Below are positions 11,421-58,784 of a stretch of DNA of 64,000 nt, in pieces. The notes below the pieces were generated by a model. The model did no database searches. It saw nothing but the letters and a program-made list of their open reading frames with translations, and was not told where the DNA came from. The DNA comes from Perna viridis (taxonomy: Eukaryota). The DNA lies in the NCBI GenBank assembly GCA_037379345.1, contig CM074519.1, positions 18,254,103-18,318,102 on the forward strand, read 5' to 3'. The position numbers and the translations under genes are program-made. Every line of letters starts with the position of its first letter. Positions within the stretch are counted from its first letter, which is position 1.

Positions 11421-12907
11421 CATGAGTGAAGATTAAAGATCGGGTTATCTTTCAAGAGTTTGAGAAATAAAAGTCTTTTTGGTGAGTAGAGCGTAGTGGG
11501 ACGAGTAAAAAAAAAATCAAGAATTTCTCTAATGATTGAAATATAACCCAATCTTGGATCTTCAGCAAGTGTAAGTACTTTTTTCTTCCATGAAAACATT
11601 TATATTTTTTTCACTTTTCCTACAGAGGGCCGCCATTTCTTAAACCATTTTATATAGTGTCATTAAAATTTCTTTTGCCTTTGTTTTGAAAACTCTTTGA
11701 TGCTGCCACTTTTAAGACATTTCATTGGTTAAGAGAATGAGGTAAGACACACATACTTTACCTCGTCTTACAAGGGTAGTCTCAACTTGTAAAGGGACAT
11801 TTATGGAAGAATAATGTGTCTGAGTTGTTATTTCTGTGAGCTAGCACAAAAAAAAATATTAGAGAAACTATCTTAAAAGTTTGTCTATAGGTTTTCTTGT
11901 GTTGAGATGACTTCATAACATTTTGTTACTTGAAACAGTTATTGTTTCACGAAAATGCAAGTAGCATTATTTTCTTTTGTTTATGTGTGAATATCAGCTA
12001 CAAGTTAAGAGAAATACTACGTTTTTCTTTGGAAAATATACATCACAGCCACTTGACAATATACTGCATGAAAAAAGATTATTGTTTGATGCTTTTAAAG
12101 GGAGATCATCAAATGTTCACATAGAGAGCTGTGTATCGTTTTATCAGCTTTTGGCTATTCTCTGTCAACAAATGTGGAAGGATTTTAGAACTTTCCATCA
12201 CACCTTTGAAAAAATTTTTAAATACCATTTTCAGGTCAGATCATCAAAAAATGTAGAACACATTTACATCATGAAATAAACTTCATTCATATGTTTTACT
12301 GTGTGTTGCAGATGGTTGACTTCCAAGTTTAGAATATGTTTTGTGTAACCTTTCTCACACTGCTCATGTCTGATAAAAATGGTACTGAATACATAAGAAG
12401 CTCAGGTACTCAAGCATATATGGTGTTGGATTCAGTAATTTTTATGTGAATGTAAGGCAAATGGAATATGTTTTCTGATACATGAGTATGATAATTATAA
12501 ACAGCAGTTTCCTGAATAAATAAAATGTGTTCATATTTTTTTTTAAAATTTGAGCTTCATGCAAAATTTCACTTTCTCATATTAGTTTTTTATGTGTGCA
12601 TTAAAAGAATTGAGAAAAAATTACTTCATTTTTTTCCCATTATTATAAATAAGAAGGTATGCAATTTTGCAACTGTGGAAATTTTGCAGAAAATGAGATC
12701 TTGAGTTTTGTGAAAAATCCTACAATAATAGTATTAAAAATTCCATGATGCAAGTTTTTTTTCTTATTGTGAATCCATTTTCAGTTAGTCATATTGTTTG
12801 CAATAAAGTGAAGATATTGCAATAATATTAGAATTGATAGTAGTTTAAAAATATGTTAAAAACAAACAGTTTCTTAGATCTTTCAATTTTTATAATGGAG
12901 ATATTAA

Positions 12908-13672
12908 GTAGTACTCCAGATAAGAATCATGCAAAATGTGATTCATGGTTGGAAAATTTTTTATTTTATTTTTGATAATTTATTTAAAATGCATAAGTAA
13001 ACAGAAAATATTATATGGCTTTTCATAGAACACTTGTTCATAAGAGTTAAAAATTATATAGAATGCACTGTAGAATTCAAAGTTAAGGGAAATAACTCTG
13101 TACAGTCCTTGAACCGATCCGCACGATGATTTGATGGATCGATGATCATTGACTGATTGATCGCTGATGGATCAATGACCAATGACCGGTGACCGATCTG
13201 ATCGCAGTTTTGTTATGTAAAATGACGCAAGATCTGTTTTAAATTAAAGAAATGTAAAATAAAAGTATAAATTAATGTTTATATCTATTACATGATGTAA
13301 ATATGTGTAAAATTAATAAAGAAAACAACAAAAAATAGTAAAATACATTGAACGCTATGTGGTCATGTGATGCGATCACCAGTTAAATGAATCGGTTTGA
13401 CGGATCGATGACTGACCGGAAACTGATTGGTGATCGATGATCGTTTTGCACGGATCGGTTCAGGTACTGTAAATGAAACTAAAATACAATAGAAAGTGTT
13501 AGATTTTCACTGTAAATTATCTCCTAAGAACAGACAGATTGGAATGAATGGTTATACATCTCATTATATAGACCCTTAAAACAACTTTATAACAATAATA
13601 AAAATGTGCAGCCTTTTTTTTCAGGTGAATCACATATTACAGAATTTGCATGATTCTTACAAAGACTGTTAC
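12908..13672. mobile_element. Family F element carrying a nested MITE
   Basis: TTAA at both ends. Inverted aagaatcatgcaaa / tttgcatgattctt. Reverse-oriented relative at 30950-31425. Confidence 0.8.
13103..13469. mobile_element. Tc1/mariner-type MITE with GATC-rich subterminal repeats
   Basis: TA|cagtccttgaaccgatccg ... cggatcggttcaggtactg|TA. Miniature relative at 62857-62927. Confidence 0.85.
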
Positions 13673-16198
13673 TTAAGTTTACATACAAAATTAATGGTCA
13701 TATCCCATAGAATGTTAGCTTTTATGTTATAAACATACTAACTTTTTTTCCCAGATTTCAACTTAAAAAAACTTGCCAAGTAATATTTTGGACAAAACAG
13801 TGAAATAAAAGATTTGCATTTCTTTACTTTAAAACAGGAAATTTTAGTTTTGTTTGCTTTTTTTAAAAGTTAAGATTTATATTTAAAAGCTTAATTTTAA
13901 TTTTGATATAACAAGGAAATAGATATTAAAACAGTTCAATCATGATTTTGCCCACAGGAAATTGACTCTCATATTGCAATAAGAAAAACAGGAAGATTAG
14001 AAAAGGTTTAATGAGCCGAATGTAGTGAATTCTGACTGTCCAAAGGTTGCTGAAGGTAAGATTGTAACTTAAAGAATAGATTTTTTTTTTGTTAGTTTGG
14101 TCCATTATGGAGTTTAGTAGGTCTTGCAGTAGATCTTTATTCATTCATGGATACTGAGTAAATCCAATATTTCAGGTTTAGCAGAGGTGAATTCTTGGGT
14201 AGAACCAAAATGTTAGATTTAGCAGGGGTGAGAGTAGAGCAAAGTGCATATTTAATACCTCTACTCAAGGAGTGAGTTGTATGTTGAAATCGCTTTGATT
14301 GTCAATCCCACCCTCCTTCAAAATTTTGTACAATAATTTGGTTCAGAATTGTTAGGTTTATTTCAAATTTGGTTGGTGTATATGGAAAGGGCATATGTTG
14401 TAAACCAATAGGTTAAAATAATGCAACTATGTCTCATCGGTATTCAGCCATATCTTTATCCCAACATGCAGCCCAGTGGAAAATGCAGAAACGTTCACGA
14501 TTGGTGGATAATAAAAAAGATATTTTCATGAAAAAATTGTACGAACAGTAAGGAACCAAAAGTATCGAATTTGAAAGCTAGCAGCCCATATATGTGTATT
14601 TTATGGAGCACTTGTGGCTTAGGGTGGCTACTGAAAAAATGATGTTTGAAAAAGTATCCCCCTTTTTGAAACTTAATTTACGGGCAGAAACGCTGCATGA
14701 CATGGTGGTTTTTATATCAAAATTTAAAAGCTATATGGGTGTATTTTAGCAGCATTGCGTTAGATTAGAGAAATTTCACCCAGATCTATTTTAGAGTTTA
14801 GTGGAAATAATGACCACCCCATTCAGAAATTGCATTGTGAATAATTGTGCTCTTGTAAGCCAATATGTTTGCTGGTGTATATCAACTTCCTGTTCTAGTG
14901 GGGGTATATCTAGCATGACAGTGTGTGCAACTTCAAGTTTTTTTAAAAGTCGTGGAGAGCAAACAAATACTACATGCACAAATTTACATTTATCTTCTAA
15001 TTTGGAGAAGGAGGTCAAGGATCCCAAACTAGCTCTAAATCATAAAATGTCATCTTGTTTTATGTAGATATAGGTTGCAGCTTAAAGCTATGAACTATGA
15101 GAAGAGCTTATCATTACTCCTTTTTCTAAACCTGGAAAATTTATTTTTTGTGTAAAAAATAATGTGCACCTGCAAGTTTTTTTATGAGCCACTGCCATTC
15201 CACCTGAAATCCTGGATCATCCCCTGCTGTTTTATGCGAGGTCACATTTCTTCAAGAATTCAGTCCATCAATTTCAATGCTATCTTTGATTCCAGGTGAA
15301 TACCTGCATTTGCCATCCCCACCCCGCCAACCACTCCCCTCCCCCATGTACAGGAACATAGCCCAAATCTAAACATAATCTGAAGTTCTGTTGCACTTGT
15401 ATTGGTTTCAATGTATACCCCAAAAATGCTCAGATGGGGGATTACTATTATTTTTTTGTACCTACTTTAATCTGAAATCCTTGATACAGTGTTCCTTGGA
15501 TGAAGTTCTTCAAGCTTTTCAAGCCTTTCATAATATTAGCTATCTTTGATAAACAAGATCCAGGGAAATGTAAAACCTATGTTCGACAAACCCTGCATAG
15601 ACAGGGACTTAATGAAAACTAAACATCCTCAAACGTCCTTTTATATCGGTGACAATGTCAGGTGTGGATCCGAGGAAATGCAGGCTAGGAGAACACAGCC
15701 CCCTAAAAAAAATTGGGAAAAATCCTGAATTCACCCCTGCATTACTTTCAAAATTTGGGGAATGCAAATTACTTTGGAAACTAGATAACTTATTTAGTCA
15801 CTAAGTTTATAGGCATGTTTTTCTTTGTATGAATTTTACAATTCTTGTTTGCTTTTTAGGTGTTTCACATGTGAAGTCTCAGCTTTTCTTGTACTGCACA
15901 TGTTTTGTTTGTATTAGGAAAATACTTCTTTCTTTTGTTAACAAGGAGAAAGAGGGCTGTTGAAATGTAGAATGCGAAGTTATGTAATTTGCATTTTGTT
16001 TTCAATCAATCTACTCTGTGCAGTTTTCAATTCACCATTGTCAACAAAATTGTATTGTAATAATCTTTTAAGAAAATTTTTTGAAGAAGTTGCAAGTTTA
16101 ACCAGGAGAATAGTGAAATAAAATTGTCATGAAAGTTTTATGTTTACCATGCTTATTTCTTTAAACTCCAAGGAATAATACCGTTTTTTTTGCCAAAC

Positions 16199-22577: not shown

Positions 22578-22608
22578 AAAGGAGTATGATGGACACTTGA
22601 GAAAACTG
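22578..22608 (+). CDS. Candidate upstream exon of septin gene 2 ((R)KEYDGHLRKL)
   Basis: cttctag acceptor, CTG|GTAAGT donor. The only open frame is phase 2-0, compatible with the ATG AG|gtaaga donor at 11737-11741. Confidence 0.35.
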
Positions 22609-22910: not shown

Positions 22911-22975
22911 TTCAATTCATACACAGTTTTGTGTCTATTCGGGAAAAGATGGGATGATACATTATCCATTAGGAA

Positions 22976-24252: not shown

Positions 24253-24480
24253 TTATGTAGTCCTTGCTAAGATATCAGTGAGTCTTTGACTGTTATTTTG
24301 ACACAACTCACTAAGTTGACTCAACTCTTCCTTCATGGTTAAAATCTGGTCTTGTTGTTGAGCTACAATGAATATCAGTACCACTGTTAATAATCCGGCC
24401 AAAAACTTAGGAATGTCATCAGCATTCTGGTAAAATATCAACGAAAATAATCCAAGTCCGAAAATCATATCCAGTGCCAT
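24253..24480 (-). CDS. 75-aa ORF: two hydrophobic segments plus coiled coil; small membrane protein or 5' end of a decayed gene
   Basis: aacaATGG start context. Hydrophobic MIFGLGLFSLIFY and FLAGLLTVVLIFIVA, followed by heptad-like QQQDQILTMKEELSQLSEL. Confidence 0.35.
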   Translation of the reverse strand: MALDMIFGLGLFSLIFYQNADDIPKFLAGLLTVVLIFIVAQQQDQILTMKEELSQLSELCQNNSQRLTDILARTT

Positions 24481-26576
24481 TGTTAATGATAATTAACTTT
24501 TAAACACCAACCAGCACTTTGACTTCTAAATTTTAAATGTCATAAGCGCAGGTAATACCATATGTTAAAATCTGGTTCCATATGTCAAAAACTTTAGATA
24601 TATTTTAAATTCTGGTTCCATATGAGTTAACCAAAGTTTGTTTAACAAGGGTTGTCTATAGAGACAGAATACACAAAACTTATTACATCCAGCCTGATGA
24701 GAGTTTTGACATGTAGAAATGATTAAAATTCTTTTTATGGATATTTTGTGCTATGGGCCCTACATTGGTCCTATAGATTTAATGCATTTCTTTTCATTAA
24801 ACAAATAATCCCATGTAATGATTTAAAAAAGATTTTTAATATTTGGAGGAAAAGTTATATGTTTATTCCCTTTAAAATTTTTGTTATAAAGCTGTTTTCA
24901 TTCCTATTGGAAATTAATGATTTTATGGTGTAATAAATCATTATAAAGGCTTCACTTTATAAGGCAGGGTGCCTTTGAGTCTGTTATTTCAGGTTGTCTG
25001 TATGTTTAATTTTTGTGAACTTTAAAATACTTTTTTATGTTAAGCTTAATATTCTCCTCAAGAATGTTATCTTTTTTTTCTGAAGTGACAGCTTCGTCAA
25101 AGCTTTAGTAAACATTCTTTTCTTCATAGCTGTTAACCTTTTGAACAGTTCATGTGGATGACTCTCCCCCACTGACTCTCTCTCATGAGGGAGATTTTTA
25201 CATAAAAGCATCTTTTTTTTGTGTAAAAATTCAGCTATTTGGTATTTTTCACTGAAATTTTTGTAATTTTAACCTAAAACATCCCACAAAACTATCATTT
25301 TTTATATGTGAGATTTTAATTTTTCATTGATTTTGTAGGAGTTTCCACCTAATGTTGGTATGGTTAACAAGTTATATGACATTTTATTTTAATTGAAGCT
25401 TTGACTCAGAGATTTAAAATGCCAAGACGTGAACTCATTGTGAAAAAAATCAGAGACTAGCAATTTGTCCTAACAGGACCATACAGTAAAACCTGACCAG
25501 TGACATTCCAAGGAAGAGCAAAATTGTGGTCCCCTAAAGGGTATTAGACAGATGGTATTTATATACTGTGAAAGTACTTTAATTCGTGGATACCAATTGT
25601 CGGGATTAGGGACGAAACACAAGTTCATTGATTCTTGAATTCATGGTTTTGAGGTTTTCATTATACACATCAATGGAAATCTTATCATTTGGAACCAAAT
25701 TTCATAGTTTGGTCTTCCCTTGAAAAGAAAAATTTTGTTCCCATATTTCCTGGTTTCTTGGATTATCCTTATTCCTTTCCAGGCAACACAAACAACATAT
25801 TAGTTTCTTCAATTTGAGTTGGTTTTAGGGTTGGGTCAATATTTGAATAGATTGCCAATATTACCAGTGCACTTCAAAAAATTAGGAATTAGTCTTATGT
25901 GAAGGCCATGCAAAAATTCAAAATAGATTTTTCCCTGACAGGATCTAATCTTGTTCTGCATGTATTGTAATTGTTCCAGTTAGTTAGCAATAATCGGTAT
26001 AACAAGATCAACGCCACCTATTGTTTAACTTCCTATTTGTTGTTGTTTATGGTTCGTTATTTTGTAAGTTACGGTGACTTACCATAAAACAATCATGTTA
26101 CGTAACACCCTAGATGATAAGATTATCACCATTGTATGGTATTTTGGGTTTTCTGATTTTTTATGCATTTAAAGGGAGATAACTTAAAGATTTAGTAGCT
26201 TTTTTGTCTTATATAGTTTTAGGTATACTAGCATCTTTAGTTCTTGTCTATTATTTTGTATATGTGTCCTTCTGCTTGTCTGTTTACTTGAATGTATTTC
26301 TGTCTGTCTGTGTGTCTGTCTATCTGTCTTGTGTGTATGCAAATGTCCTGTAAGTACACCTTCTCCTAAACCACTAAATAGATTATGACAATTTCTAACT
26401 ATGTTAGATATCACATTTAGATGATGAAAGAACCCTTTGGGTTAGAAATTTTGTATGTGGTCTTAGGTTGATTAAACAGTCACAATGTTGCACTGATATC
26501 TATGACAGTTAATTTTGAAAAAAAAACAAAGAACAAAATAAAAACAAAAGCTATTAGACTTATATTTGAATTTCAG

Positions 26577-26673
26577 GTTTAATGCAGTTGTCTCCCTTTA
26601 GACTGAGTTATGTTTCCTGGACTGAAACCAACAACACTGGCTTCTCATGGCAGGAGAGATTTCAGGAGCAGAG
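26577..26673 (+). CDS. Candidate upstream exon of septin gene 2 (ATG 26610: MFPGLKPTTLASHGRRDFRSR, phase-1 exit)
   Basis: tttcag acceptor, GAG|gtaatt donor. Joins exon 28024 in frame. Confidence 0.4.
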
Positions 26674-27125: not shown

Positions 27126-28023
27126 AGTGTATATTGAACATGATCCATGCATACTCACAAACTATCCCACTGTTAATATCAAAGGGTCTATACTAATATA
27201 ACATGGACAGAGTATCTTTAACTCAATTATACAATTAAAACATAAGACATACAGCCAATACAGAAAATAATACTTTATCCCTGTCTCTTAAAAGTGAATG
27301 TCATCAGAGTGTAAACTAAATTACATTGTTCCTGGATGTGGAAAAATTATTTCAAAAAGACACTTCTTCGATACTGTAAATGTACTAATTTTTGCGGTGT
27401 ACTATTTTTCGCTATTTTCACCGAGAACAGAAAACTGCAAAAAATAGAACTCGCAAAATAATTTTTAATATTAACGCTAAACCTTTTATTAAATCGCGAA
27501 AATTGATACCCCCAAATATGTTAGCTTGACAGAATATGTGATCATTAGCAACTGCTAAAATTAATATGTTAATTTACAGTATTTGAGAGCAAAATATCAA
27601 TGCAAGTGTGAAATTTAGTTTTTGCATCTCTGTCAAGTAAAAAGAAAGATAAATGAAGAACAAATGATTTTATCAAAAAATATTTTTAGATTGAATTATT
27701 TAGATATAAATACAAAAAAAACCAATCATTTATGTTGTAAATTCAAGTATGCTGTACATATAATTTAAGGTTGATTGATTGATTGTTCTGGTTTAATGCC
27801 CGAGCAGCAAAGGAGTATCCTGTCATATTAAAGCAGCATTAGAATCATATTAAGTAAGCATAGAATAAAGGACTCTTATTTGTAGTAGACAGTCTTTACT
27901 TGTTCTTATTGCAAACAGGTTCCACAATACATGGTGTGTTTACTACTATTTCTAAATTTGAGGATTAAAAAAAATTTTAACTGTTTCAAGGGAAATAACT
28001 ATCTGTATTTCAAACAATTTCAG

Positions 28024-28070
28024 ATTTGATTGAGAGAATCAAGGAAGAAACAGTGATGAATTGTGAAGAT
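28024..28070 (+). CDS. Candidate upstream exon of septin gene 2 ((D)LIERIKEETVMNCED)
   Basis: tttcag acceptor, GAT|GTGAGT donor, purine-rich, phase 1-0. Runs in frame into EEDEF at 58691. Confidence 0.55.
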
Positions 28071-29303
28071 GTGAGTATTTCACTGCTATTAATATGGTTT
28101 AAAGGGATAAGACCATGACCAACACCATTTTCATTTTTTTGTGAAAATTTCAAATGAAAATCTCAAAAGCCCGTAATTCTCCTGGCATGCATTATAATGC
28201 TGGAGTGGTAAAAAACCTTGCCATTAATCAGATTTTTAGGAATTTGTAACTAAATGAGTACTGACATATTAAATATATAGACGTCCCATTAAGAAAGCAT
28301 CTGCCTTTAAGCTATGAGAACATTGAGAACTACCAAGTCTTGTAAGCTACATTGTTAAAACATATATTCTCATTCTTCTGTTGTGTCACAGTTTGACCAT
28401 AGACATTTAGCAATTATGTTGAATTTATTTTGCCTTATCAAATATACTTACCGGTAGTCAATGTAATTATTTTTTCTATAATTAGAATCTTTTATAAGAT
28501 TGTGCTTAAACTTGTACAAATACCAGATATAAACATATAGTCTAACTTTAGCAAAGTATCATTAGTAATATGGGTGGAGGAAGGTAATTTAGCAATGTAA
28601 AATAATTATAAAAGATAACATGCTTCTCATCTAGATTTAAATAATCCTTGGGTGTAGCCATGAAATACTTAAATTTTAATGAATAAAAATGATGATGGTC
28701 TGAGTATCTGTCCATAGTATTTCTGAGTGTGGATTTACAAACCCAATTTCAAATAAAGCCCAATAGGAGCATTGTAGTGTAATCAAATGGTAGGCTAACT
28801 GAAAGCTTCTTGCCTATTTTTAGACAGTGCTTAAACCTGTACAAATACCAGATATAAACATACAACCTATGAGTGTATGGAGGTAATATTGCAATGTTTA
28901 AGAAGTATGAAATATAAGAGGCTTCTCACCAAAGCTTCAATTAGCCTTGGGATGAATCATGAAATAGCTTGAATTTTAAAATATAAAATGAAATGATGAA
29001 TATCATAAATATAGTTAGCATTTTGAAAGTGGATTCTCAAGCAGAAATGAGAATCTAGGTTCCATATAAGTTCCATATAAAGCCCAAATAGGTCCAAGGC
29101 AGAGTCTTGTAGGATAATCAAAGAGATAGGCTCCATGAACAGCTTCAGTAAAAAGCTGTGTAGAGCTGATGTTTATTATTGTACCAAACCAATTGAAAAA
29201 TTGTGTATTGTATGGTATCTTATCGTATCTCCTGGGCCTTTTCCAGACATTGCTTAAACAATATATAAACATGTATGTAGCAATATAGCTCTAGAGAAGT
29301 ATA

Positions 29304-34120: not shown

Positions 34121-36194
34121 ACAGAAACAGAAAAACCTCCCACATTATTCCTAGTTCCTGTGTCCCCTAATTACCAACCGATCATACCGCTTCACTTCAA
34201 CATCTCACCACCACCCATCCACCCCCCTTACTCCTGAGTTTTCTACCCCTAGTCCAAATATTAACCAAACACCTTCCTGAAATGAACTACACACTAAGTC
34301 CTAAAAATGTTGAATTTAAGGCAAAAAAATATCTTAGATACTCATACCCTCCTGACCCATTTTTTTCACACTCCCCGAAAAGTTTTATTTTGATTTTTTA
34401 CCCAATTTAGGTCAATCTCTTTCAAATTGACAGCATTTTTCACTTAAATCGAATAAAATTCACCGCCCATCCCTAGTTTTGATAAAATGTTGGATGAGAA
34501 TCTGGGAATTTTTTTATGATGGCCTAAACTGGGTTTCACTGTATCTATGATTTATGCCAGAAATTAGTTTTACTCTAAATTGATAGGGGTGGGGTCATCA
34601 GAGTTAATCATAAACAATTTATTAGCATTATAAAAAGATATATACTTTTGCTTTCTTTGGAACAGTTGTTTTTAAACACTTTTTATTTATAGACAATTTA
34701 TTTGGATTATAAAATAGATATAATCGTTCATATCTATTGAACTGTTGTTCTTATATAGAATTTTGATATGAATTGGCTGAGAGAATATAAGCATAGGATT
34801 AAGTATTGATTGTGTTCTGTTACAAATGTTTTTTTTTATTTGTACAATGAAATCTGAATAGAAAGATTTGTTTTGTGTCAACATGTATACTTTAAAAGTG
34901 AAAAATGAGGAAATGGTGATAAAATCAGTGAAATTAGAGAAACTATCTAAAATTAGGATGTAATGAAGTTTCTGGACTATAATTTTCTTTTCTAAAAATT
35001 TAAGTCTATAGGATAGGCTGACAATAGATTTTTTTTTAAACATTCTTGACTACTCTTTCTTTGAAAAGACAGAAAGTGTGGACAAGAGGAGAAACTGATT
35101 TGCATGTTTAAAATGTGTGGGATGAAGTGATAAAAAAAGGAGATAAAATTCAGAAGGTGATCAACAGACTTGTAAAAGATAATCATATAGAACATACACA
35201 TTTTGAAAGTTTGTAACTTTAAACTTGACATACTCAAGGAGAAAAGTTTTAACTGATAGTTGATAATTCTAAAATTTAACAGAACATTGTTTTAGACAAG
35301 GAAAAGTAACCACACTGAACCGATTACTTTAAGAAATTCAAATACGGTAATGAGGAAGAAACTTGTCATGTGATGCAAAACAATAGCTTATTATTTGGAA
35401 TAGAAATCTAATTGTAAAAACAAAACATGAATACCTATACCTTGAAATAGGGATAAAAAGTTGATAAACTGAAGGGAAAAATATATCAAAAGTGCAAAGT
35501 ACTTTGTATTACCAACCCTTGAAATAGATTTGATATTTGACCTAACTGAGTGATCTGTTTAGGAAATGCTGGGGAAAACAAGTGTTTTTATATAGAAATT
35601 ATTTTTTCTTCGAAAAAAAGATGTGATGACTGATTAACTTTAAACTAAGGAATTAGGAAGACATAGGGAAAACAGAGTTGAATTAAGAGGAAAAACTATT
35701 TATATCTGTAGGCCTTGAAATACATGTAACCAAATTTTGTGTAAAGGAAAAAATGGAGACAAATCAATTTGCAAATAGGAAAACAATTGTGTGACTAAAG
35801 TACACATGAATTTGAATGAATATATGTAATATTTTGGCTAACCAATATTTCTTGTGAAGAAAAAAAACTAATTTGAAGAGAGAAAATGAGTGATTAAAGG
35901 ATTAGTTACTTCAACTGACCATACCTTAAAATTAATGAAATATTTTGATTAACCGAATTTTAACCAAAGGATAGGATAAAACGATTGACTAAGGAATAAA
36001 AAACTATAAGTATATCTTAATTTGAATGATGGAGATTTGATACAGATGTTACACCTTACAATAAACAAGTTGTGTATTGGATGTGTATTGGGGATGTTAA
36101 TTAGAAAAGATGAAAGGACAGGTGTAATATTGTGGTGATATTAGATGATCTAAAGGTTATACCATTGGCAATTAGTGTTTATAAATAATAAACT

Positions 36195-36227
36195 ATGGCA
36201 GGAAGGAGGAGGAAAACTATATCAAAG
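36195..36227 (+). CDS. Candidate alternative first coding exon of septin gene 2 (MAGRRRKTISK)
   Basis: aactATGG start context, consensus AAG|GTAAGT donor, phase 0. Preceded by about 1.4 kb of purine-rich, UTR-like sequence. Confidence 0.65.
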
Positions 36228-36942: not shown

Positions 36943-38803
36943 AACTAGCACAGTAAAAGGTGCATTAATGTTTTTAAAGCCATGATTGTATACTTGTATA
37001 TTCTCTGAAAACCATATCTTGTCTGTTGAAGGGAGATAATTTAATGAAACTCAAGAACTGAATAGATGGTACAGATATTTTGAAAAGACATGACCTTGCA
37101 TATATATATATATTATAATCTCACGGAGATTTAGTTATGAATAGATAATATTAGAAGAAATATATGACCTTGCATATCATAATTGTACAATGATGAATTT
37201 AATGACTGAGATATGTTTTAAAAATGTGATAGACATGATTATGATTATATTTACTCCATGTTTTGCATGGTTTCTTTGTTCATGATCATGGTCGTTGACT
37301 GTTTAGATAATCAACAGTACAAAGACCCAAACAATTTTGATTTTTAGCTCAGATCATGTTCATTTACCATAGAGGAAAGTACACAACAGACAGGCCCTTC
37401 CATTGTAGCTGTGAGCTATGTCTTTTTCTTCTTTTTTTTGTTAGTGGGAGGAGGGCCGTGATGGGCTGTGGCTGGATGGAGTGGGTATACACAACTCCCC
37501 TCATTTCATACCAAGAAACAGTCAATCAAATATTGTGATTTGGAAATAGCATGTGAATCCTTTCAAATTCTGCTTTAAATTTACACCCCAAAAGTAAAAG
37601 TAATACTTAATTTAGAATATCTTTGAAAATCTTCTTATTTCCTTTAATTGGCCTACTTTTAGTGTTTGCTACTCATAAACATTTCCAAAGTGGTGGGTGG
37701 GAAGCCTGGGCCTTTGAACAGTGTTCATAGATAAAAAGTAGTCTGGAAGGAGTATAATTCAATTTATAATCCTGTTAATTTGTTATTTAGTACTGTATTG
37801 TTAACACATGTACAGGTATATTTACTATTTTTCTACATTTTCTGGAGATAATAGAATCCCCCCACCCAACATTTGATCAAATGCCACTTAGAATTTATAA
37901 GCATCAAAGGGAGATAATACGATAAAATAATGCGATAAATATCATGGATGAAATTTGAAGCATAAAATGCAATTACATATGTCATGACCATGCATAATCA
38001 AATCCATGTAATATTTCACACAAATTATTCTAATGAACCAAAATTATGCTCTAAGCTGAATGTAAAGTCCTTATTCTTCATCCAGAATTAATTATTTTAT
38101 AGTCTCTTATTTATAGGAGGTCAGGAAAATAATCTTCTTAAATATAGCTGTATTTGGAATTTTAAAACTTTAATTATATACTTGGTGAATGTGTGAAATA
38201 GAAATATTTTATTTATGGCTGTTCCCTGGTCATATTTTTAGGACATTCATACACCAAGGTTGTTTTTAGTATAAATTCTCATGTTTCAATTCAAAGTCAT
38301 TATGAATGACAGTGTGGAGACTCACCACTAAGAGTCAGCTGATTAGAAAATGTGAAAAACTTTTGGCAATGAAAAATTAATGGCATCGCTGAACCAAGAC
38401 AAAATTAATTGATGGATCTAATATTGACAATTTCTATAAACTGTTTTGACGTTTGCCAAGCTAGACATCTGGTCGTCAAATAAAAGACCAAGAGACGAAC
38501 CAATAATCAATACAGACTCCTGATGCTAGGTCATAGGGATGTTTATTCCTATAAACTTATTATATTGAACACAAGGCATCTAATATTTACGGCATTATTG
38601 TTTCATACTGATGATTTCTCTACATGGAAATTAACATCTTAATTCAATAGATTGTACCTCTATGGAATGTTTAAATGGTGTTGCGCTGAGGCTGCAGATT
38701 TAGATGTATTAGTTCTTTGTTTTTCTTTGTGTCTGAACCTCTAAGGATGTAGTCTCTATGGTTGGACATACCTTCTTCTTAATATAAAGCAAGGACACTG
38801 AAG

Positions 38804-38830
38804 ATGTTTAATTCTCGTTCTTCTGAGTGT
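38804..38830 (+). CDS. Candidate alternative first coding exon of septin gene 2 (MFNSRSSEC)
   Basis: aagATG start, TGT|GTAAGT donor, phase 0. Confidence 0.45.
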
Positions 38831-39009: not shown

Positions 39010-39042
39010 CTAAACAAACCTTGTTGGGAAGGATGGAATAAG
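39010..39042 (+). CDS. Candidate 33-nt microexon of septin gene 2 (LNKPCWEGWNK)
   Basis: About 110-nt AG-free T-rich tract, tttgctgttag acceptor, consensus AAG|GTGAGT donor, phase 0-0, open frame. Confidence 0.6.
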
Positions 39043-45558: not shown

Positions 45559-45890
45559 CACCTGTATATTAACTGTATAAATTTTGTGCACCAATAAGGT
45601 TTTATGTCCCAAACCCCATAACCTTAAATATACATACATATACATACAAGTGCCTGACTCTTACATTGACTGGTACAACAGGAGGTTCAACTTTACTATC
45701 TAATGCCTAATATTTATATTGACTGGTAAAACACCTGAGGAGATGTATTTCTTTAATGACTGATTAATGAGGTAATACACCTTTAGGACAGGTAATTACA
45801 GGCTGTTGTGGTCATCATTTGTTACCTGTTACACCTGAATGATCACCTGTTTTGTACCTGTCCAATATATGTCATTGAAGTCTTGTCAGT
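45559..45890 (+). promoter_or_regulatory. Cluster of CACCTG/TACCTG boxes plus Inr-like TCAGT; candidate promoter of the giant-exon isoform
   Basis: CACCTG at 45559, 45732, 45832 and 45844. CAGGTA at 45789. TACCTG at 45823 and 45855. TCAGT at 45886. Confidence 0.35.
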
Positions 45891-46843: not shown

Positions 46844-48730
46844 ATGACTTTTGACTTGACTAATTACCATAAAACTGTTACAAGTTTGACAGCGGTAATT
46901 AATCACAAGATGGAAGAGCAAAGAAAAACGGGATTTAAAACACCATTAAAATTCCTTTCCATAACACGATCAGCAAGTTCGGATTCAAAATTGGCCTTAC
47001 CAAAAATATTGGATAGGCCTTTGAACAAGAGGCTTTTAACGCCACGTGCAATGTCTATGTCAAAGGCAGATCATTCGCCAAATGGAATAGAAACCAAAGA
47101 TGACATTGATCAAGTTAAATATAGAAATGCAACGCTGACAACTCCGCAACGTCCCATGTCCATGTTTGTTTCAGCAGGAGCAGACCCCAAGACGAGATGG
47201 AGAGATAATGCGACAGACAGCAGGTACCCGCTACTTCTATCTGTTTCTTCAGAAGGACAACTAAGTCCCAGTAGAGATGTGAATTCAAACATTAAAGAAG
47301 GTACTAATACTGAAAGTCAGAATCTACCTCAAGAGGTCAAAGTGCATAATCTTGAAAACAACCTCGATAGCAATGCAAATCCTGGAAATGAAATGGAGGA
47401 GCTTAAATATCTACCAAACCCAACTATTTCTGGATGTACCAAAGACCTCTTGTCTCTTGAGAAAAGCAGAGAAACTGATGTTTCTGTTCAAAACAGTGCT
47501 TCACATTTGTCTTGGAATAGTACAAGTGCCCAAGGAGTTCCACATGGATTAAGGGACACTCTTTATCAAACTGAGGTAAAGGATAATTCAGGTTCAAGTG
47601 ACCACAGCAACACTATTGTTTCAATGCCAACCAAGCCTATATACTATAATGTTCTCCCTGTGTGTTCTAAAGAGGAAGCTGTTTCACTTCACCCTAAAAG
47701 GGAGATAACTGAAAATGTGATAAAAAGTGAAAGAACTGCAGTAAGTGAAGAAAGTACAAATTCAAATGAGGGATTTGATAAAATAAATGCCCCTGTTGTG
47801 GATATAAAAGATAAAAAGGGTGAAAATAAAATTAATTCTATACAAAACATGAAAGAAGATGATTTGGTAACAAAACCTAAAGTTAAAGAGGAGCATCCTC
47901 CTCCTAAATCCTCTTTGACGGCTTTAAAGAGAATGTCAGGTGACTTTGATTCTGGGTTTGTATTTTCTCCAAGGACAAGGGCTCTTCTGTCTGAAAATGA
48001 GAGATCTAATGCTAGTGGTATAGAGGAAAAACCCAAGTCAAGTTTCTCTTTAATGTCAAGATCAGAAAAGTTACGGAACAAACTGAGAAGTTTGTTGTCG
48101 GATGATAATGGATATTTGCCAAAAAAGGATACATCTCAAAAGAATAACTGTAAGCAGGAGACTTCTACAGAGAATTTTGAAATGGCGAAAAATGCAGTGC
48201 TAAAATATGAGTGCAATTCTGACCTCCCCAATAAGGTCAAGGATGAAAGTAGTACCTTGACCTCTAGAGAAAAGTGTCAAATTAATGTATACCAAAACCA
48301 TCCATCATTGTCTGAAGACAAAGTGGCTAAAATGAGCTGGAAATCACAGCCAGATCTATTGACTGATATTAGAAAGGACAAATTGTCCTTTACATCAAGT
48401 GAAGTTGTTCAGAAACCCAAGTCTAATTCTTTCAGTGAAAATAAGGAAATAGGAACTTTGACCTCTTATTCAAAAGCTGAAGAACAGAAGAAAGATAATA
48501 TTGATGGCCTTCAAAAAGATATGACCTTGACCTTAAATACCAGTGTAGAAAAACCCAAACCAGATGCCTTTGGTGATGTTAAAAGGGATATGACCTTAAA
48601 CTTTGATGGCAATGCCAGGCAAAAGAGAACTAATGATCCTTTATCCCCAATAGATTCATTATTGACATCACCAACACGGCCTGCCAGACGTCGCCATAGC
48701 AGAAGAAGATACTTCAACCCCAAGACACTG
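46844..48730 (+). CDS. Giant alternative first coding exon of septin gene 2 (about 629-aa Ser/Lys-rich disordered N-terminal extension)
   Basis: Only long ORF in the window (640 codons). It ends 11 codons after a CTG|gtaata donor at 48730 (1887 nt, phase 0), in frame with the acceptor at 58691. The start could be Met 46844 or 46910. Confidence 0.75.
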
Positions 48731-50155
48731 GTAATATTTATCTCACAAAATTTTTTTAGCATATGATTATCTCATGCTAGGGATCTGGCTTACATATATA
48801 TATACCCATGAACATTATTGCCAAGCTTTGGCTGTTTTAAGATGGAGTTTTCATTCGAATATTTTCTCATTTACCTGAAGAGTCTAATGCCACTTAAGTG
48901 ATCTATGTTTCTGACCCTATTATTGAGATATAATGGGAACACACTGTGATATTTTTTTTAAACTGGATTTCCAATCAGATGTTTTCTCATTAGGCTAGAG
49001 AGTCTAATCCCACTTGAGTATAGTATATAAATAACTTCAAATAACCTCAATCAGGTGTGCACCATGGCCATTGAAGTTATTTCATATAGCATGAAAAAAT
49101 ATAATTTTAATATCAAAGTTTAAGGAGAAAATCAGCAAAAAAGGGTTAATGACTTCACAGTCACATTACACATTTTGGTCTATGAGATGATGGACAAAAT
49201 TGTTTATCAATGCATTCAGGAAGTGTGTTTCATCTGAAATTAAATTATTAGAAATTAACCCATAGAAATTTTCTTTTTCTGAAAGGCTTGTAACAGATGG
49301 TCAATTCACAAAATTAGTTTATTTGATCTCTGTAAAAAGAAAATGTATTGGTATAGAAATCTTCAGTGTGTTTCTTATTCTTAAGCTAAAAAATGAAAAT
49401 GGAAAATAAAAGATCTAGACAATTTTGATAAATGAACAATACGTTTTGATACTCAAGTCATGAACTTGGTTTTGACAAGTGCCCTGATGAATTGCTAATA
49501 ACATTGACTTGAATAAGGTTAAATAATGAATCTTAAATTATTGTAATTTGATGTTTGGTCACACACTTTATCATACTGTAGTCAGCATCTGTTATTTAAT
49601 TGATTTGAAAACCACAAAATTCAAAATATGAACATTGACAAAAATGGAGTTATTATTATTCTAATTTTGATTTTGCAAGAGTTATTGTTCTTGATTCGGT
49701 TTAATTTGGTTGATTTTAGTGGGTGATAAATGTATGTTTTTTCCAAAAGTGCAGATCTGAATATGGAAATAATTATCGTAATGGGAAAATATAGCTTATG
49801 TAGACTGAAAAACATTGTTGTTTTGTGGGGTTTTTCTACACCATGAATCACTTTACCATTGGCAGAGTCTGAAATTTATGTGGACTGGTACTTAAAAACT
49901 TCTACAGGGTGAACCTATGAACCTTTTCATCATCCCTTATAGAAGTAATCTCCCTTTATTGATGTTTTTTTTAACATTGCCATCTTTAAAGATGTCTTGT
50001 TTACCTTGTAATTTAATGTGTTGGGCCAGTATCATTGACAAAATCCTCGACAGGAAAATAAAAAATGAAAAGAAAAAAGGGAAGTGCTGGGAAACCTTTC
50101 TAAACCAAACCCAGAATAATTCAAAAACCTGTCTATACCAAACACCTTTTTTATT

Positions 50156-55349: not shown

Positions 55350-55850
55350 CTTCTATGATTGTTGATCTGTGGTCTACATTTTGTGGTTATGCAGGACCTG
55401 GTCAGATATGTAGTCCAGTTCAATTACATCATTGCAGGCTTTACTCTGGGCCTGTAATCAATATTTTTATGGTTATGCAGATTTGTTTCATACCAATAGC
55501 CCAGGTATTGTTGATTATGCAAGATTTGTTCTGATCTATGGTCCTCATTTCATGGATATAAAGGAGGTATTTTGAACTGTAGACTGTGGTCCACATTACC
55601 ATTGTTTATGAAGGAGTTGTACTGAATCTGTGATCTACATTTCTATGGTTATTAAGAGGTTGTTATGAAGGAGTTGTATTGGACCTGTGGTCTGTGTTTC
55701 TATGGTTATTTAGAGGTTGTTATGGAGGAGGTATATTGACCTGTGGTCAACATTACTATGGTTATAAAGAATATTAAGAGGTTGTTAAAGAGGAGTTGTA
55801 TTTGACCTGAGGTCATAATATTGCCATGATTTGAAGCATTATGTTATACC
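55350..55850. repeat. Degenerate tandem repeat (about 45-60 bp units)
   Basis: Recurring ctgtggtctacatttctatggttat...gaggttgttatgaaggagttgta. Confidence 0.75.
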
Positions 55851-56058
55851 TAAGGTCTTCCTTGTTATGGATATGAAGAATCCATTCTTGACTTTTATAG
55901 TTCCGCAGGATACAATTTTCAGAACTGACTGAACCATTGTGTTCTAGGTTTAGGTTTATGGTATAATTAAATCATACAATGCAGTAAGTGAAGCATATAG
56001 AGAACAACTACTACAAGGGTACACTGGTTTCTTGATATTGATATGGATCAGGGATAAT

Positions 56059-56439
56059 TACTGTAAACATACTAATTTTTGTGGATTCTATCAAGTGAAC
56101 ATTTTTATGGTTTCAAAAAATGATAAGTGTTCTGTAGTGTTAAAAATTAATTCCAAGCGTACTTTTTATATGCTTTTCTGTCCGCCACAAAAAAAGCAGA
56201 AATAATTACTGTGAAAGTACTGTTATTCGTGGGTTACCAATTTTTTCGAGGTTTTAGTTGGTGGGCCAAACCACGAAATTTAATTGCCAACAATAAGGAG
56301 ATTTCCATTGATATTTATAGAAAAAAAATCAAAACCACAAATTCAAAAATCTTCTGTTTCTTCCCTAATCCACGATAATTGGTATCCACGAATTAAAGTA
56401 CTTTTACAGTACACAGCGAAAATTAATACCTATACAGTA
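56059..56439. mobile_element. Family A MITE with nested family B MITE (56209-56409)
   Basis: Inner TA|ctgtgaaagtac...gtacttttacag|TA splits the host's aaaattagTAcaccgc region, which is intact in the 22976 copy. Confidence 0.85.
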
Positions 56440-56984
56440 TTACCAGTTTGGCTGTATTTGAGCAATAACAAAACAAAAAACAATATACAAGGAAGCAAAC
56501 ACTTAGTGGAATTTCATTCAATAATTTTTCTTAAAACTTCACATGTTCCACATCAAGAAAAATAACTTGACAATTGTGAAATAAACAAATAAATTCCAGT
56601 CAATTTACATGAATTTTTTCGTCAACAAATATGTCAAGCATTTTATTTACAATGTCAACTGTCACATCTGACAAGATATAAACACGAATAAGATGTTCTC
56701 GTCCACGTAACTCGTCGGAAACATGTCTTTAATTAGGGTATTAATGGATGACCATACAAAGCCGAACGTTGTCATTTTGTTGACCATTTATGGCGAAGAA
56801 TACTGTCATTTCATTGGTCATTTATGGCAGAGGCTTTATTGTTGAAAGAGAGCCTGAGGGAATGTTTAGTCCAATGTTTAATAAATTGTCTCAGTAAAAT
56901 TTGTACTGTTACTACAATGAATTCTCAAAATAGCACTGCCAAAGAGAATTAATCATCTCTAAAAAGAACTGACCTTTTCATATG

Positions 56985-57270
56985 GTCCTTTTTCACCACA
57001 AAAAAAAATCGTAAGTGTAAAATTAGAAAAGTGATATATGATGTCATAGAAGATCAAAGTATTGAGACTCCATTACTTACAACTGATTTTACTCTTATGA
57101 TTTTTTGTGAAAATTACGGACCACTGGTCCATATAACGTAAAATCTTAAGAGTGAAATTAGTTATAAGTTATTAGTTATAAGTTATGACGTCATAATAGA
57201 AAATGGCATTGTATTGTCATCGCCCAAGATTAATTTTATGCTTACGACTTCTTGTGAAAAAGAATCCAGT
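56985..57270. mobile_element. MITE remnant(s)
   Basis: tttcac..tcgtaagtgtaaaatta pairs with taattttatgcttacgacttcttgtgaaa. Confidence 0.6.
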
Positions 57271-58690
57271 GCACTTTTTCACTGGAAAATAAGGCACATG
57301 GTTTACTTCTTACTTTTGGTTTAGAAGTCAAGAATGTTTCACAAAAAAAATGTAGATCATGGTGTGTCAAGGTCACTAATACTAATTATAGATATATATA
57401 TATTATGGTCTCTTTAATAGTGGCACAGTTTAACATTTCCCCATAATTTACCAACAGGTGTAAAATTTGTAAACAAACTCACTCAAGAAAAAATTCAAAA
57501 TCTGATAAAAATGATAAATTTTCTTGGCGCTGGGCCATCTTCCCTTTGTTATATATGTTTACTATATCATCCTTATTTAAGTATAGCTCCACCCAAGAAC
57601 CTTGCTGACAGTGGTTTATCACCTATTTACAGCCAGATGTGTTTCAAAATCTCTTTAAATAACCCCTGCAAAGTGTGTTTCCATTAGGAATGCTGTATTT
57701 TGTGAGATATGTTTGACTGGCTACAGTGTAAAATGAGCTGGAAGTTTTTAGCATGAATTTTCCAGAAATTTATCATTGTGGAACTAAATTGAAATTTAGC
57801 TGTAAATATCTGCTTAACTCAATTTTCATTGACATTTTGATTGTTAACATTGTCTATTAGGAATTCTGAAGGTTTTCCAGTCAAAATAATTTTGTCATAA
57901 AGATATGCATGAATCCTTAATTATCGGCTTATGCATAATTCTTAGATGGACCTGTACTTAAAACTGTTTTAACCATGACAAAACTATTAGAGCTATGCCC
58001 ATTATACACCAAAATAACAATTATGATTGTAGGAATTGTGTTTTAAGATGTTGAATACCAGTCTATGTGGTTATTAAATGTAAACCATAACAAAGCGACC
58101 CAGCATGGACATTGAAGGCTTATATGGTCTACAGAAAGTGCAGTTGTGCTTTTATGGTGTTTAGATTAAGAATTTGGGTTTGTAGGGCAGTGTTCTGAAT
58201 GATGAACAAAACTTTGAAATTATACTACTTTGTTTAGGTATAGGGCTTGATACTTTGAGCATAGACATTCAGGGGCCAATTTTTTCTACATTCCCAGTCA
58301 TGAAATATCTACTAAATAACCTCCACATGATTTGAAACAAACAAAAAATAGCAGTTTAAGATGTCTGGACACAAAATTCACACATGGAATGTTTATCCCA
58401 AACTTAGTGGAAAAATTTTCAGGTTAAATGTGCTTTTACAATTAAGGCAACAATAACATTCTTTTGGTTCTTGATATCTATGCCTGGGGCAAATTACAAT
58501 AATTTTTTGTCTGCATGTCTGTTCACCTATCCATTTATTTCTGTCATCAAGGCTTGGCACCACATAATTGCTCTCAGCACTACCTCAAGTACTAATTGAC
58601 TGGGTGCATCTTACTTCTTTGTCTGTTTATCTTTCCATTTCCATATGCTTTGGAGGTTAATTTTTACTTTTATATTTTTTAACTTCTCAG

Positions 58691-58784
58691 GAGGAAGATG
58701 AGTTTATAGGATTTGCCTCCCTTCCTGACCAGGTCCACAGAAAGGCTGTGAGGAGAGGATTTGATTTCAGTCTTATGGTGCTAG
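58691..58784 (+). CDS. Septin gene 2 (SEPT2-group, Sep4/SEPT4/5-like), first common core exon
   Basis: ttctcag acceptor (phase 0), G|gtgagt donor. [31 protein letters not shown](G) contains the alpha0/polybasic region of group-2B septins. Confidence 0.95.

What the first reader, a model, noticed from the sequence alone, without database searches (positions are those of the whole stretch)
11737..58784. Array of alternative N-terminal exons feeding one septin core (variable N-terminus / constant core design)
Seen: the first core exon of gene 2 (58691) has no Met and a phase-0 acceptor. At least five upstream modules exit in phase 0 and read through into EEDEFIGF. (A) ATG AG| 11737-11741 plus 22578-22608 gives MRKEYDGHLRKL. 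(B) 26610-26673 plus 28024-28070 gives MFPGLKPTTLASHGRRDFRSRDLIERIKEETVMNCED. (C) 36195-36227 gives the polybasic MAGRRRKTISK. (D) 38804-38830, with or without 39010-39042, gives MFNSRSSEC(LNKPCWEGWNK). (E) is the 629-aa giant exon. Known: vertebrate SEPT9 and SEPT4 diversify N-termini by alternative promoters, and the N-terminus next to alpha0 influences NC-interface, membrane and cytoskeleton binding. Inference: this invertebrate septin may use tissue-specific promoters to swap basic, acidic, Cys/Trp-rich or very long disordered heads. C, E and the 39010 exon are strongest; A is weakest. Short ATG-to-donor matches can occur by chance.
Basis: partly seen in the sequence, partly recalled or inferred. 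Interest (0 to 1): 0.8.

Follow-up and report, generated by a model that had tools for sequence, protein, structure and literature searches.

The report
Alternative first exons of mussel septin
A mussel septin gene of the SEPT4/5 type puts about four different N-terminal heads (37, 11, 9 or about 607 residues) on one shared core through alternative 5' exons; Mytilus gene annotation already shows the same layout, so this is a sound but fairly ordinary gene-structure finding.

Summary

**Well supported**
- B (26610-26673 plus 28024-28070) matches spliced mRNA contigs of a related mussel exon for exon and Mytilus isoform X2.
- E, the giant exon, is joined straight to the core in Mytilus X1 proteins. 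One RNA run here has a contig with about 1.8 kb upstream of the acceptor. The conserved start is the second Met (46910), giving 607 aa, not 629.

**Supported by conservation only**
- D1 (38804-38830) equals Mytilus X4, with the same donor, the same relative position and a conserved single-copy upstream block.
- C (36195-36227) sits where the Mytilus X3 exon sits and shares upstream sequence with it, but the peptide differs.

**Not supported**
- A and the 39010 exon show no conservation. ATG-to-GT mini-ORFs are very common here (869 in 51.5 kb).

Two RNA runs lack the giant exon yet express the core with only 182-199 nt upstream, so first-exon use differs between samples.

Verdict: partly confirmed, and a new member of a known kind (Mytilus X1-X4, vertebrate SEPT4/SEPT9).

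The parts
13908..14055 (+). Non-coding leader exon (exon 0) of the B-type transcript, with donor AAG|GTAAGA. The 5' end is approximate.
   Evidence: The first 138 nt of the 5'UTR of a related mussel's spliced mRNA contig (L002) align here and nowhere better in the window (SW score 36 against a window-wide p99 of 29). That contig then continues at 26577. The support is moderate and cross-species only.
26577..26673 (+). Exon B1: acceptor ...TTTCAG|, ATG at 26610, 21 codons plus 1 nt, donor GTAATT.
   Evidence: L002 and L003 mRNA contigs align at 85% over 26575-26673 and then jump to 28022. The Logan protein P0245 is 100% identical over these 21 residues. Mytilus X2 proteins begin MFPGLKP.... The segment is conserved at the syntenic place in M. 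edulis.
28024..28070 (+). Exon B2: completes the 37-residue head and leaves in phase 0, donor GTGAGT.
   Evidence: L002 and L003 go from B2 directly to 58691. The match to P0245 is 14 of 16 residues. It is conserved at M. edulis L010 ~10905-10950.
36062..36128 (+). Conserved non-coding block 70-130 nt upstream of the ATG of C; promoter or 5'UTR of the C-type first exon (inferred).
   Evidence: The M. edulis X3 exon plus 260 nt upstream finds its best local alignment in the whole window here (score 43; next unrelated 31; p99 31). The reverse test agrees. The block is single copy in the genome.
36195..36227 (+). Module C: ATG plus 11 codons (basic head), donor GTAAGT. It is the positional counterpart of the Mytilus X3 first coding exon.
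   Evidence: It lies 2.6 kb upstream of D1; the M. edulis X3 exon lies 1.9 kb upstream of X4. The DNA partly aligns with the upstream part of the M. edulis X3 exon. It is one of only 5 mini-ORFs with a GT[AG]AGT donor. The peptide is not conserved and the exon itself scores barely above background (27 against a p99 of 26). There is no RNA evidence in this species.
38405..38590 (+). Conserved promoter-like block upstream of D1, with CCAAT-type and TATAAA-like motifs (read by eye).
   Evidence: It is 75% identical over 173 nt with M. edulis L010 22296-22468, which lies the same distance upstream of the X4 exon. It is single copy in this genome.
38804..38830 (+). Module D1: ATG plus 9 codons ending ...SEC, donor GTAAGT. 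Orthologue of the Mytilus X4 first coding exon.
   Evidence: M. californianus X4 begins MMFRSEC, and a Logan mRNA protein of another relative begins MFEC, before the same core. The exon with the same GTAAGTAT donor is found in the M. coruscus and M. edulis genomes at the syntenic place, differing by an in-frame 9-nt indel.
45747..45861 (+). Conserved non-coding block about 1 kb upstream of the giant exon with a donor-like ACAG|GTAATT. It may be a leader exon or promoter element of the giant-head transcript (inferred).
   Evidence: blastn matches to M. coruscus (L001 9007-9105) and M. edulis (L010 28463-28572). There is no open frame into the donor (read).
46910..48730 (+). Module E, the giant exon: 607 codons from the conserved Met (an in-frame, weaker-context ATG at 46844 would add 22), donor KTL|GTAATA, phase 0.
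   Evidence: It is 43% identical to M. coruscus SEPT4, where the exon end is joined directly to EEDEFIGF; the same holds in M. edulis and M. galloprovincialis X1. RNA-like runs X1-X14 hold 55-97% of its words. The X1 contig has about 1807 nt upstream of 58691. In M. coruscus the upstream ATG runs into a stop. No Pfam family matches.
58691..58784 (+). First shared core exon, with no Met: the common phase-0 acceptor for all heads. It carries the conserved basic stretch HRKAVRRG.
   Evidence: GT..AG joints in one transcript contig in each of four runs. It is 97% identical to P0245.
60500..60586 (+). Core exon 2, with the P-loop GDSGLGKST.
   Evidence: Joints; boundaries and translation; PF00735 match.
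62701..62824 (+). Core exon 3, with DTPGF (G3).
63497..63631 (+). Core exon 4. The gene continues beyond the window to about 70.3 kb (L011).

Best explanation
Gene 2 of the window is a septin of the SEPT2 subgroup (named septin-2, -4 or -5-like in relatives). It lies in a mytilid mussel genome and spans about 56 kb, from roughly 13.9 kb of the window to about 6 kb beyond its end. Its 363-residue core starts at an exon without a start codon (58691). Translation start and N-terminal head come from one of four mutually exclusive 5' modules, all leaving in phase 0. (1) A non-coding leader exon near 13.9-14.06 kb, then B1 and B2, gives a 37-residue mixed-charge head (about 400 aa in total). (2) C gives an 11-residue basic head (about 374 aa). 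(3) D1 gives a 9-residue head ending SEC (about 372 aa). (4) The giant exon E gives a 607-residue low-complexity head that matches no Pfam family, with a conserved start motif and a basic RRRxSRRR motif just before the core (about 970 aa). Shown: B and E structure, shared core splicing, and sample-dependent use of E. Inferred: C and D1 are used in this species, and each module has its own promoter. Also inferred from general septin knowledge: SEPT2-group subunits sit at the ends of the septin rod, and the N-terminus lies next to helix alpha0 at the NC interface. Swapping heads would therefore tune polymerisation, membrane binding or partner recruitment without touching the GTPase core. Modules A and the 39010 exon are chance ATG-to-donor matches.
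For: - Core: PF00735 matches exon by exon; GT..AG joints 58784>60500, 60586>62701 and 62824>63497 in contigs of four runs.
- E: the M. coruscus protein joins the giant exon end to EEDEFIGF; M. edulis and M. galloprovincialis X1 do the same. The X1 contig has about 1807 nt upstream of 58691, and runs X1-X14 hold 55-97% of the exon's words.
- B: spliced mRNA contigs L002 and L003 of a relative (85% nt identity) are collinear with 26575-26673, 28022-28071 and 58691. P0245 is identical over B1. Mytilus X2 has the same head.
- Sample-specific use: X21 and X22 hold 0.00 of the giant-exon words, yet carry core contigs of similar depth with only 182 and 199 nt upstream. That fits B2 (47) + B1 (97) + part of exon 0. 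The X2 contig ends exactly at 58691, as expected at an assembly-graph branch.
- D1: Mytilus X4 and a Logan mRNA protein carry the same head type. The exon, its donor and an upstream block are conserved in two Mytilus genomes, and the block is single copy.
- C: syntenic with Mytilus X3. Order and spacing B, X3, X4, giant, core are 0 / 10.8 / 12.7 / 19.5 / 36.4 kb in M. edulis and 0 / 9.6 / 12.2 / 20.3 / 32.1 kb here. The upstream block is the best hit in the window.
- Donor strength: C and D1 are 2 of only 5 mini-ORFs with GT[AG]AGT.
Against: - No junction read or contig of this species was seen for C or D1.
- The letters of the 182-199 nt upstream parts in X21 and X22 were not shown, so assigning them to B is an inference from length.
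- The peptide of C does not resemble Mytilus X3, and the exon itself scores at the edge of background (27 against 26). A TATAAATA lies only 7-14 nt before its ATG, so a start site there would exclude the ATG.
- Exon 0 rests on a modest cross-species alignment (36 against a p99 of 29).
- The runs are only guessed to be RNA, although their intron-free GT..AG joints argue for it.
- Separate promoters were not tested (no CAGE or 5' RACE data).
- All functional statements about the heads are inference.
Confidence: 0.6

Rival explanations
1. One reading: at least five modules including A (11737-11741 plus 22578-22608), and D with the optional 39010-39042 exon, all feed 58691.
For: The strings, donors and phases exist as described. 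A2 and D2 have good acceptor and donor dinucleotides.
Against: A1, A2 and D2 score at background, and at non-syntenic places, against the M. edulis and M. coruscus loci. None of the Mytilus or Logan isoforms carries such a head. A1 lies upstream of the inferred start of the gene (exon 0 near 13.9 kb) and A2 lies inside its first intron. 869 phase-0 ATG-to-GT mini-ORFs exist by chance in this interval.
Confidence: 0.04
2. Only two heads are used in this species: B (short, general) and E (giant, sample-specific). C and D1 are sequence relics or chance matches at orthologous places and are not expressed here.
For: RNA contig evidence here is compatible with just two upstream forms (about 1.8 kb and 182-199 nt). 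The peptide of C is not conserved.
Against: D1 keeps its ATG, frame, the final SEC codons, the GTAAGT donor and an upstream single-copy block at 75% identity, in a lineage where intron sequence is otherwise unalignable. X3- and X4-type mRNAs exist in several relatives. The X2 contig breaks exactly at the acceptor.
Confidence: 0.2
3. The heads are alternative, but they are not driven by separate promoters. All transcripts start at the leader exon near 13.9 kb, and B1+B2, C, D1 or E are chosen by mutually exclusive splicing.
For: B1 is clearly an internal exon with an acceptor and an upstream leader. No start-site data exist.
Against: C, D1 and the giant exon have no convincing polypyrimidine-AG acceptor just upstream of their ATGs. 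Conserved promoter-like blocks lie 70-400 nt upstream of C and D1 and about 1 kb upstream of E. The 5'UTRs of X3- and X4-type mRNAs of relatives (254 and 141 nt) do not resemble exon 0.
Confidence: 0.12

Closest known systems
Mytilus septin-2-like / 'uncharacterized protein' gene with RefSeq isoforms X1-X4 (M. californianus XP_052072558-62; M. edulis XP_071179497-99; M. galloprovincialis XP_076107778-79) and M. coruscus 'SEPT4' (833 aa)
   Same: Orthologous core (83-85% identity over the four core exons in the window). The same four head classes lie in the same genomic order and spacing, and all join the same EEDEFIGF exon in phase 0.
   Different: This is a different mussel lineage. The giant head is only 43% identical and longer (607 aa against about 530). 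D1 has three extra residues. The head of C is basic and unlike the Mytilus MD.TKV.. head. These isoforms are database predictions; two literature searches found no paper describing them.
Vertebrate SEPT4 and SEPT9 N-terminal isoform families (alternative 5' exons)
   Same: One GTPase core with variable N-terminal extensions from alternative 5' exons. SEPT4 orthologues in fish and birds are annotated with many X-isoforms, including heads of about 480-580 residues (proteins of 832-902 aa). SEPT9 isoforms with distinct N-terminal extensions differ in filament arrangement and partners (PMC3484102 and bioRxiv 10.1101/566513, titles and abstracts listed).
   Different: No sequence similarity between the mollusc heads and the vertebrate heads was detected. 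SEPT9 belongs to another subgroup and sits at the centre of the octamer, whereas this gene is of the SEPT2 subgroup, which sits at the rod ends (from my own knowledge of septin architecture).
C. elegans unc-61a
   Same: An invertebrate septin in which an upstream alternative start site adds an isoform-specific N-terminal segment with its own function (PMC10690161).
   Different: The unc-61a head is a predicted transmembrane helix. None of the heads here contains a long hydrophobic stretch, judged by eye.

Membership tests
Septin GTPase family (Pfam PF00735), SEPT2 subgroup (SEPT1/2/4/5-like) | Septin-type G domain detected by the family profile | tested here: met
   PF00735 matches above cut-off on successive exons of gene 2 at window 60487, 62706 and 63495 and beyond. 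Orthologues carry PF00735.
Septin GTPase family (Pfam PF00735), SEPT2 subgroup (SEPT1/2/4/5-like) | G1 P-loop GxxGxGKST, G3 DxxG and G4 AKAD motifs | tested here: met
   [13 protein letters not shown] and IAKAD are read in the exon translations.
Septin GTPase family (Pfam PF00735), SEPT2 subgroup (SEPT1/2/4/5-like) | Basic stretch at the alpha0 position before the G domain, and a C-terminal coiled-coil extension | tested here: met
   HRKAVRRGF lies in the exon at 58691. The C-terminal exons at 69333 and 70188 (window plus L011) encode a ...QRMQEMLAKMQAQLQ... segment like that of the orthologues. Helix and coiled-coil character are inferred from sequence, not modelled.
Septin GTPase family (Pfam PF00735), SEPT2 subgroup (SEPT1/2/4/5-like) | Closest relatives belong to the SEPT2 subgroup | tested here: met
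   Best database hits are named septin-2, -4 or -5(-like) across molluscs, arthropods and vertebrates, at 59-78% identity. No phylogenetic tree was built.
Alternative-first-exon N-terminal isoform array (as in Mytilus X1-X4, vertebrate SEPT4/SEPT9) | Two or more mutually exclusive 5' coding modules, each with its own ATG, spliced in frame to one common acceptor | tested here: met
   Shown for B and E: cross-species mRNA, orthologous proteins, and contigs with about 1.8 kb versus 182-199 nt upstream of 58691. D1 is supported by conservation. C is supported by position only.
Alternative-first-exon N-terminal isoform array (as in Mytilus X1-X4, vertebrate SEPT4/SEPT9) | Differential use between tissues or samples | tested here: met
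   Giant-exon words are present in X1-X14 (55-97%) and absent in X21-X24. The core contig depth is similar in X1, X2, X21 and X22 (40-59). Sample identities are coded, so the tissues are unknown.
Alternative-first-exon N-terminal isoform array (as in Mytilus X1-X4, vertebrate SEPT4/SEPT9) | A separate promoter or transcription start for each head | not testable with these tools
   The only evidence is indirect: conserved single-copy blocks upstream of C, D1 and E. CAGE or 5' RACE is needed.
Alternative-first-exon N-terminal isoform array (as in Mytilus X1-X4, vertebrate SEPT4/SEPT9) | Junction reads in this species for every claimed head | tested here: inconclusive
The loose-end table was filled by a repeat at 61.4-62.6 kb, so the letters upstream of 58691 were not shown.

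The most novel reading that the evidence does not exclude
The four-head array is an old, conserved regulatory design of the mollusc SEPT4/5-type septin. The giant mytilid head would then be an expansion of an ancestral first exon of about 40-45 residues, whose basic end (RRRLTRRI.Y.P.K type) is still seen right before the core in gastropods, oysters, pearl oysters, unionids and octopus. That basic, serine/threonine-containing motif next to alpha0 would act as a phosphorylation-controlled switch of membrane binding or end-to-end polymerisation, used only in the tissues that transcribe this head.
Probability: 0.2. Interest if true: 0.5.

Novelty: new member of a known kind. Interest (0 to 1): 0.3.

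Why it matters
This gives a corrected gene model for a septin locus that automatic annotation truncates in at least one case (the M. coruscus model lacks the C-terminus, and its gene range covers none of the short-head exons). It shows that the variable-head, constant-core design known from vertebrate SEPT4/SEPT9 is conserved in mussels in both exon order and spacing. SEPT2-group subunits cap the septin rod, so heads of 9 to 607 residues at that position are natural variants for testing how the N-terminus affects polymerisation and membrane binding. The principle is known, however, and the isoforms are already predicted in Mytilus RefSeq, so the value lies in annotation and comparison rather than in a new concept.

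Tried and rejected
A high-copy repeat at 61.4-62.6 kb filled the loose-end table, so only the lengths of the upstream parts were obtained.
2. Proteins of this species itself are not in the protein collection: the giant exon found only relatives at up to 43% identity. Its own isoforms therefore could not be read there.
3. A look-up of M. californianus X3 (P0231) failed, because only the longest product of a gene is on record. The M. edulis X1 locus was used instead.
4. Logan contig L012, which carries a giant-head ORF that reads through the donor, has unalignable flanks and said nothing about the leader of the giant-head transcript.
5. phmmer and a mytilid profile of the giant head against 133 other heads found only Mytilus. 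The resemblance of the start motif and of the basic end motif in oysters, pearl oysters, gastropods and octopus is by eye only.
6. Pfam finds nothing in the giant head or in the 31-residue core exon alone.
7. The 5'UTRs of X3- and X4-type mRNAs of relatives do not align significantly to the window.
8. A 22-nt match of exon 0 inside the M. edulis locus was judged uninformative.
9. The conserved block at 24293-24499 was first considered a leader exon or enhancer of gene 2. It turned out to be a minus-strand ORF.
Exons were searched or compared one by one, exon joins were translated only locally to check frames, and isoform lengths are sums of exon lengths.
11. The search of earlier findings gave nothing by place, and by word only two first-reader notes on this window.
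Full report
**Setting.** The window is G000:C9:18254103-18318102 of a 723 Mb genome in 46 contigs. The septin profile PF00735 matches two tandem genes on the plus strand. Gene 1 has its last G-domain exons at window 600-2700 and its coiled-coil end near 6943-7059. Gene 2 has core exons starting at 58691 and running beyond the window. The closest database proteins are from Mytilus and unnamed mussel transcriptomes: 83-90% identity over the core exons and 43% over the giant exon. I therefore take the organism to be a mytilid outside the genus Mytilus; this is an inference.

**The observation.** The exon 58691-58784 starts EEDEFIGF, has no in-frame Met before its last codons, and follows an AG. 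In one transcript contig from each of four runs it is joined through GT..AG introns to 60500-60586, 62701-62824 and 63497-63631. Those runs are therefore RNA in practice, although their record only guesses so.

**Chance level.** Between 7200 and 58690 there are 869 ATG-to-GT phase-0 mini-ORFs of up to 25 codons. 18 have a GT[AG]AG donor and 5 have GT[AG]AGT. A bare ATG-to-donor match means nothing here. C and D1, however, are two of the five with the strongest donor.

**E, the giant exon.**
- The 629-codon stretch has no Pfam match.
- It finds M. coruscus 'SEPT4' (833 aa, 43% identity), in which the end of the homologous region is followed directly by EEDEFIGF. M. edulis and M. galloprovincialis X1 proteins (890-896 aa) show the same join.
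- All of these start at MEEQ(K/R), which corresponds to the second Met here (46910). In M. coruscus the upstream ATG runs into a stop and a 2-nt indel separates it from MEEQ. The ATG at 46910 also has the better context. The head is therefore probably 607 residues.
- Fourteen RNA-like runs from four studies hold 55-97% of the exon's sampled words, and four others hold none.
- In run X1 a 4086-nt contig carries about 1807 nt upstream of 58691. That matches the giant exon spliced at 48730, although the letters were not shown.

**B.**
- A Pecten orthologue used as query returned many mollusc isoforms. Mytilus 'septin 4' / 'septin-2-like X2' proteins (399-403 aa) start with a 37-residue head nearly identical to B.
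- A Logan protein (P0245) is 100% identical over B1 and 14/16 over B2.
- Its mRNA contigs (L002, L003; about 85% nt identity to the window) align to 26575-26673, then 28022-28071, then 58691 onward. The predicted exon boundaries are therefore used in a relative's mRNA.
- The alignment starts at an acceptor (TTTCAG|, exon from 26577). The first 138 nt of that mRNA align best in the whole window to 13908-14055, which ends in AAG|GTAAGA. B1 is thus an internal exon behind a non-coding leader exon about 12.5 kb upstream.
- Runs X21 and X22 lack the giant exon, yet have core contigs of similar depth with 182 and 199 nt upstream of 58691. B2 (47) + B1 (97) + 38-55 nt of the leader fits those lengths, but the assignment is an inference.

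**D.**
- M. californianus X4 (369 aa) begins MMFRSEC, and a Logan mRNA protein of another relative begins MFEC, before the same core. D1 here reads MFNSRSSEC.
- The exon with the same GTAAGTAT donor lies 9.9 kb (M. coruscus) and 6.8 kb (M. edulis) upstream of the giant exon's start codon, against 8.1 kb here. It differs by an in-frame 9-nt indel.
- A block 215-400 nt upstream (38405-38590) is 75% identical to M. edulis and single copy. It contains CCAAT-like and TATAAA-like motifs.
- The optional 39010-39042 exon has no counterpart in either Mytilus genome or in any isoform.

**C.**
- Mytilus has a fourth head class, X3: M. californianus MDCTKVNT, M. galloprovincialis MSKMDPTKVKN, and MDTVKIKV in another relative.
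- No such peptide exists in the window.
- In M. edulis the modules lie at 0 (B1), 0.9 (B2), 10.8 (X3), 12.7 (X4), 19.5 (giant) and 36.4 kb (core). Here B1, B2, C, D1, E and core lie at 0, 1.4, 9.6, 12.2, 20.3 and 32.1 kb. C therefore occupies the X3 slot.
- The M. edulis X3 exon with 260 nt upstream finds its best local alignment in the entire window at 36062-36128, just upstream of the ATG of C (score 43, next unrelated 31). The reverse test agrees, and the block is single copy.
- The pairwise alignment suggests that C corresponds to the upstream part of the M. edulis exon, with a donor 24 nt earlier.
- This is positional orthology with a diverged peptide. It is plausible but unproven, and the exon itself is at the edge of background.

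**A.** A1 and A2 score at background and at non-syntenic places, and no isoform carries such a head. A1 lies in the intergenic region upstream of the leader exon, and A2 lies in the first intron. I regard A as chance.

**Reading.** Gene 2 is a SEPT2-subgroup septin. It has the P-loop, DTPG, AKAD, a basic stretch before the G domain and a C-terminal coiled-coil-type tail, and its best hits are septin-2/4/5-like. Four alternative 5' modules feed the acceptor at 58691. Use differs between samples. In run X2 the core contig stops exactly at 58691, as expected when two upstream paths meet in an assembly graph (inference). That each module has its own promoter is inferred from conserved upstream blocks. 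By general septin knowledge, this subgroup caps the hetero-oligomer and its N-terminus lies at the NC interface next to alpha0. Different heads should therefore modulate polymerisation, membrane contact or partner binding; none of this was tested.

**Comparison and novelty.** The same design is annotated in Mytilus (X1-X4) and, with other heads, across molluscs: Argopecten X1/X3, Pecten X1, Ostrea X2, Haliotis, Littorina, Babylonia and Octopus. It parallels vertebrate SEPT4 and SEPT9 and C. elegans unc-61a. Two literature searches found no paper on mollusc septin isoforms. This is a new member of a known kind.

**Side observation.** The basic end of the giant head resembles an RRRLTRRI.Y.P.K-type motif that precedes the core in gastropod, oyster, pearl oyster, unionid and octopus isoforms. 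Profile searches do not support homology of the heads beyond Mytilidae.

**Limits.**
- One read-laying run and one run search were available.
Joins were translated only locally to check frames, and isoform lengths are sums of exon lengths.

Noticed in passing
window 24253-24480 (minus strand): A 75-codon ORF on the minus strand inside the first intron of gene 2, with two hydrophobic stretches followed by a charged tail. Its DNA aligns to M. edulis about 4 kb upstream of B1 (72% identity over 207 nt by blastn), with a conserved donor-like site on the minus strand. It is single copy and has no credible Pfam match. It is probably the first coding exon of a small nested antisense gene.
   Followed up: partly
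window 61400-62600 (intron of gene 2; ORF 61460-61918): A high-copy repeat. Thousands of short contigs from all four RNA-like runs pile up here, with summed depths up to about 1.8e5 and many variant letters, so a transposon family is abundantly represented in those libraries.
   Followed up: no
window 11228-11374: A repeat that also occurs, inverted, downstream of the M. coruscus orthologue (L001 45688-45834; 71% nt identity). It looks like a shared short interspersed element rather than part of the gene.
   Followed up: no
L001 37939-37989 (M. coruscus): A coiled-coil exon of the ...QRMQEMLAKMQAQLQ type lies 2 kb beyond the annotated end of the M. coruscus 'SEPT4' model. That model (833 aa) is therefore truncated at its C-terminus, and its gene range covers none of the short-head exons, although the MMFRSEC exon lies 9.9 kb upstream.
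   Followed up: partly
P0002-P0007; L012 2500-2816: Several Logan ORFs of relatives (454-467 aa) read through the giant-exon donor into the intron and stop after about 10 codons, as the window's own ORF does (46844-48766). These may be unspliced RNA, DNA in the libraries, or a real short product of the head alone; which one is undecided.
   Followed up: partly
window 600-7059: Gene 1 is a tandem paralogue of gene 2, at about 50-65% identity to the gene 2 orthologues over its aligned exons. The intergenic gap to gene 2's inferred leader exon is about 7 kb.
   Followed up: no
window 48670-48730 and heads of P0018, P0024, P0025, P0142, P0145, P0150, P0165: A basic motif with Ser/Thr (RRRxSRRR here; RRRLTRRI.Y.P.K in other molluscs) immediately precedes the shared core in one isoform class of bivalves, gastropods and octopus, whether that head has 40 or 600 residues. 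It looks like a basophilic kinase site; this is a guess.
   Followed up: partly
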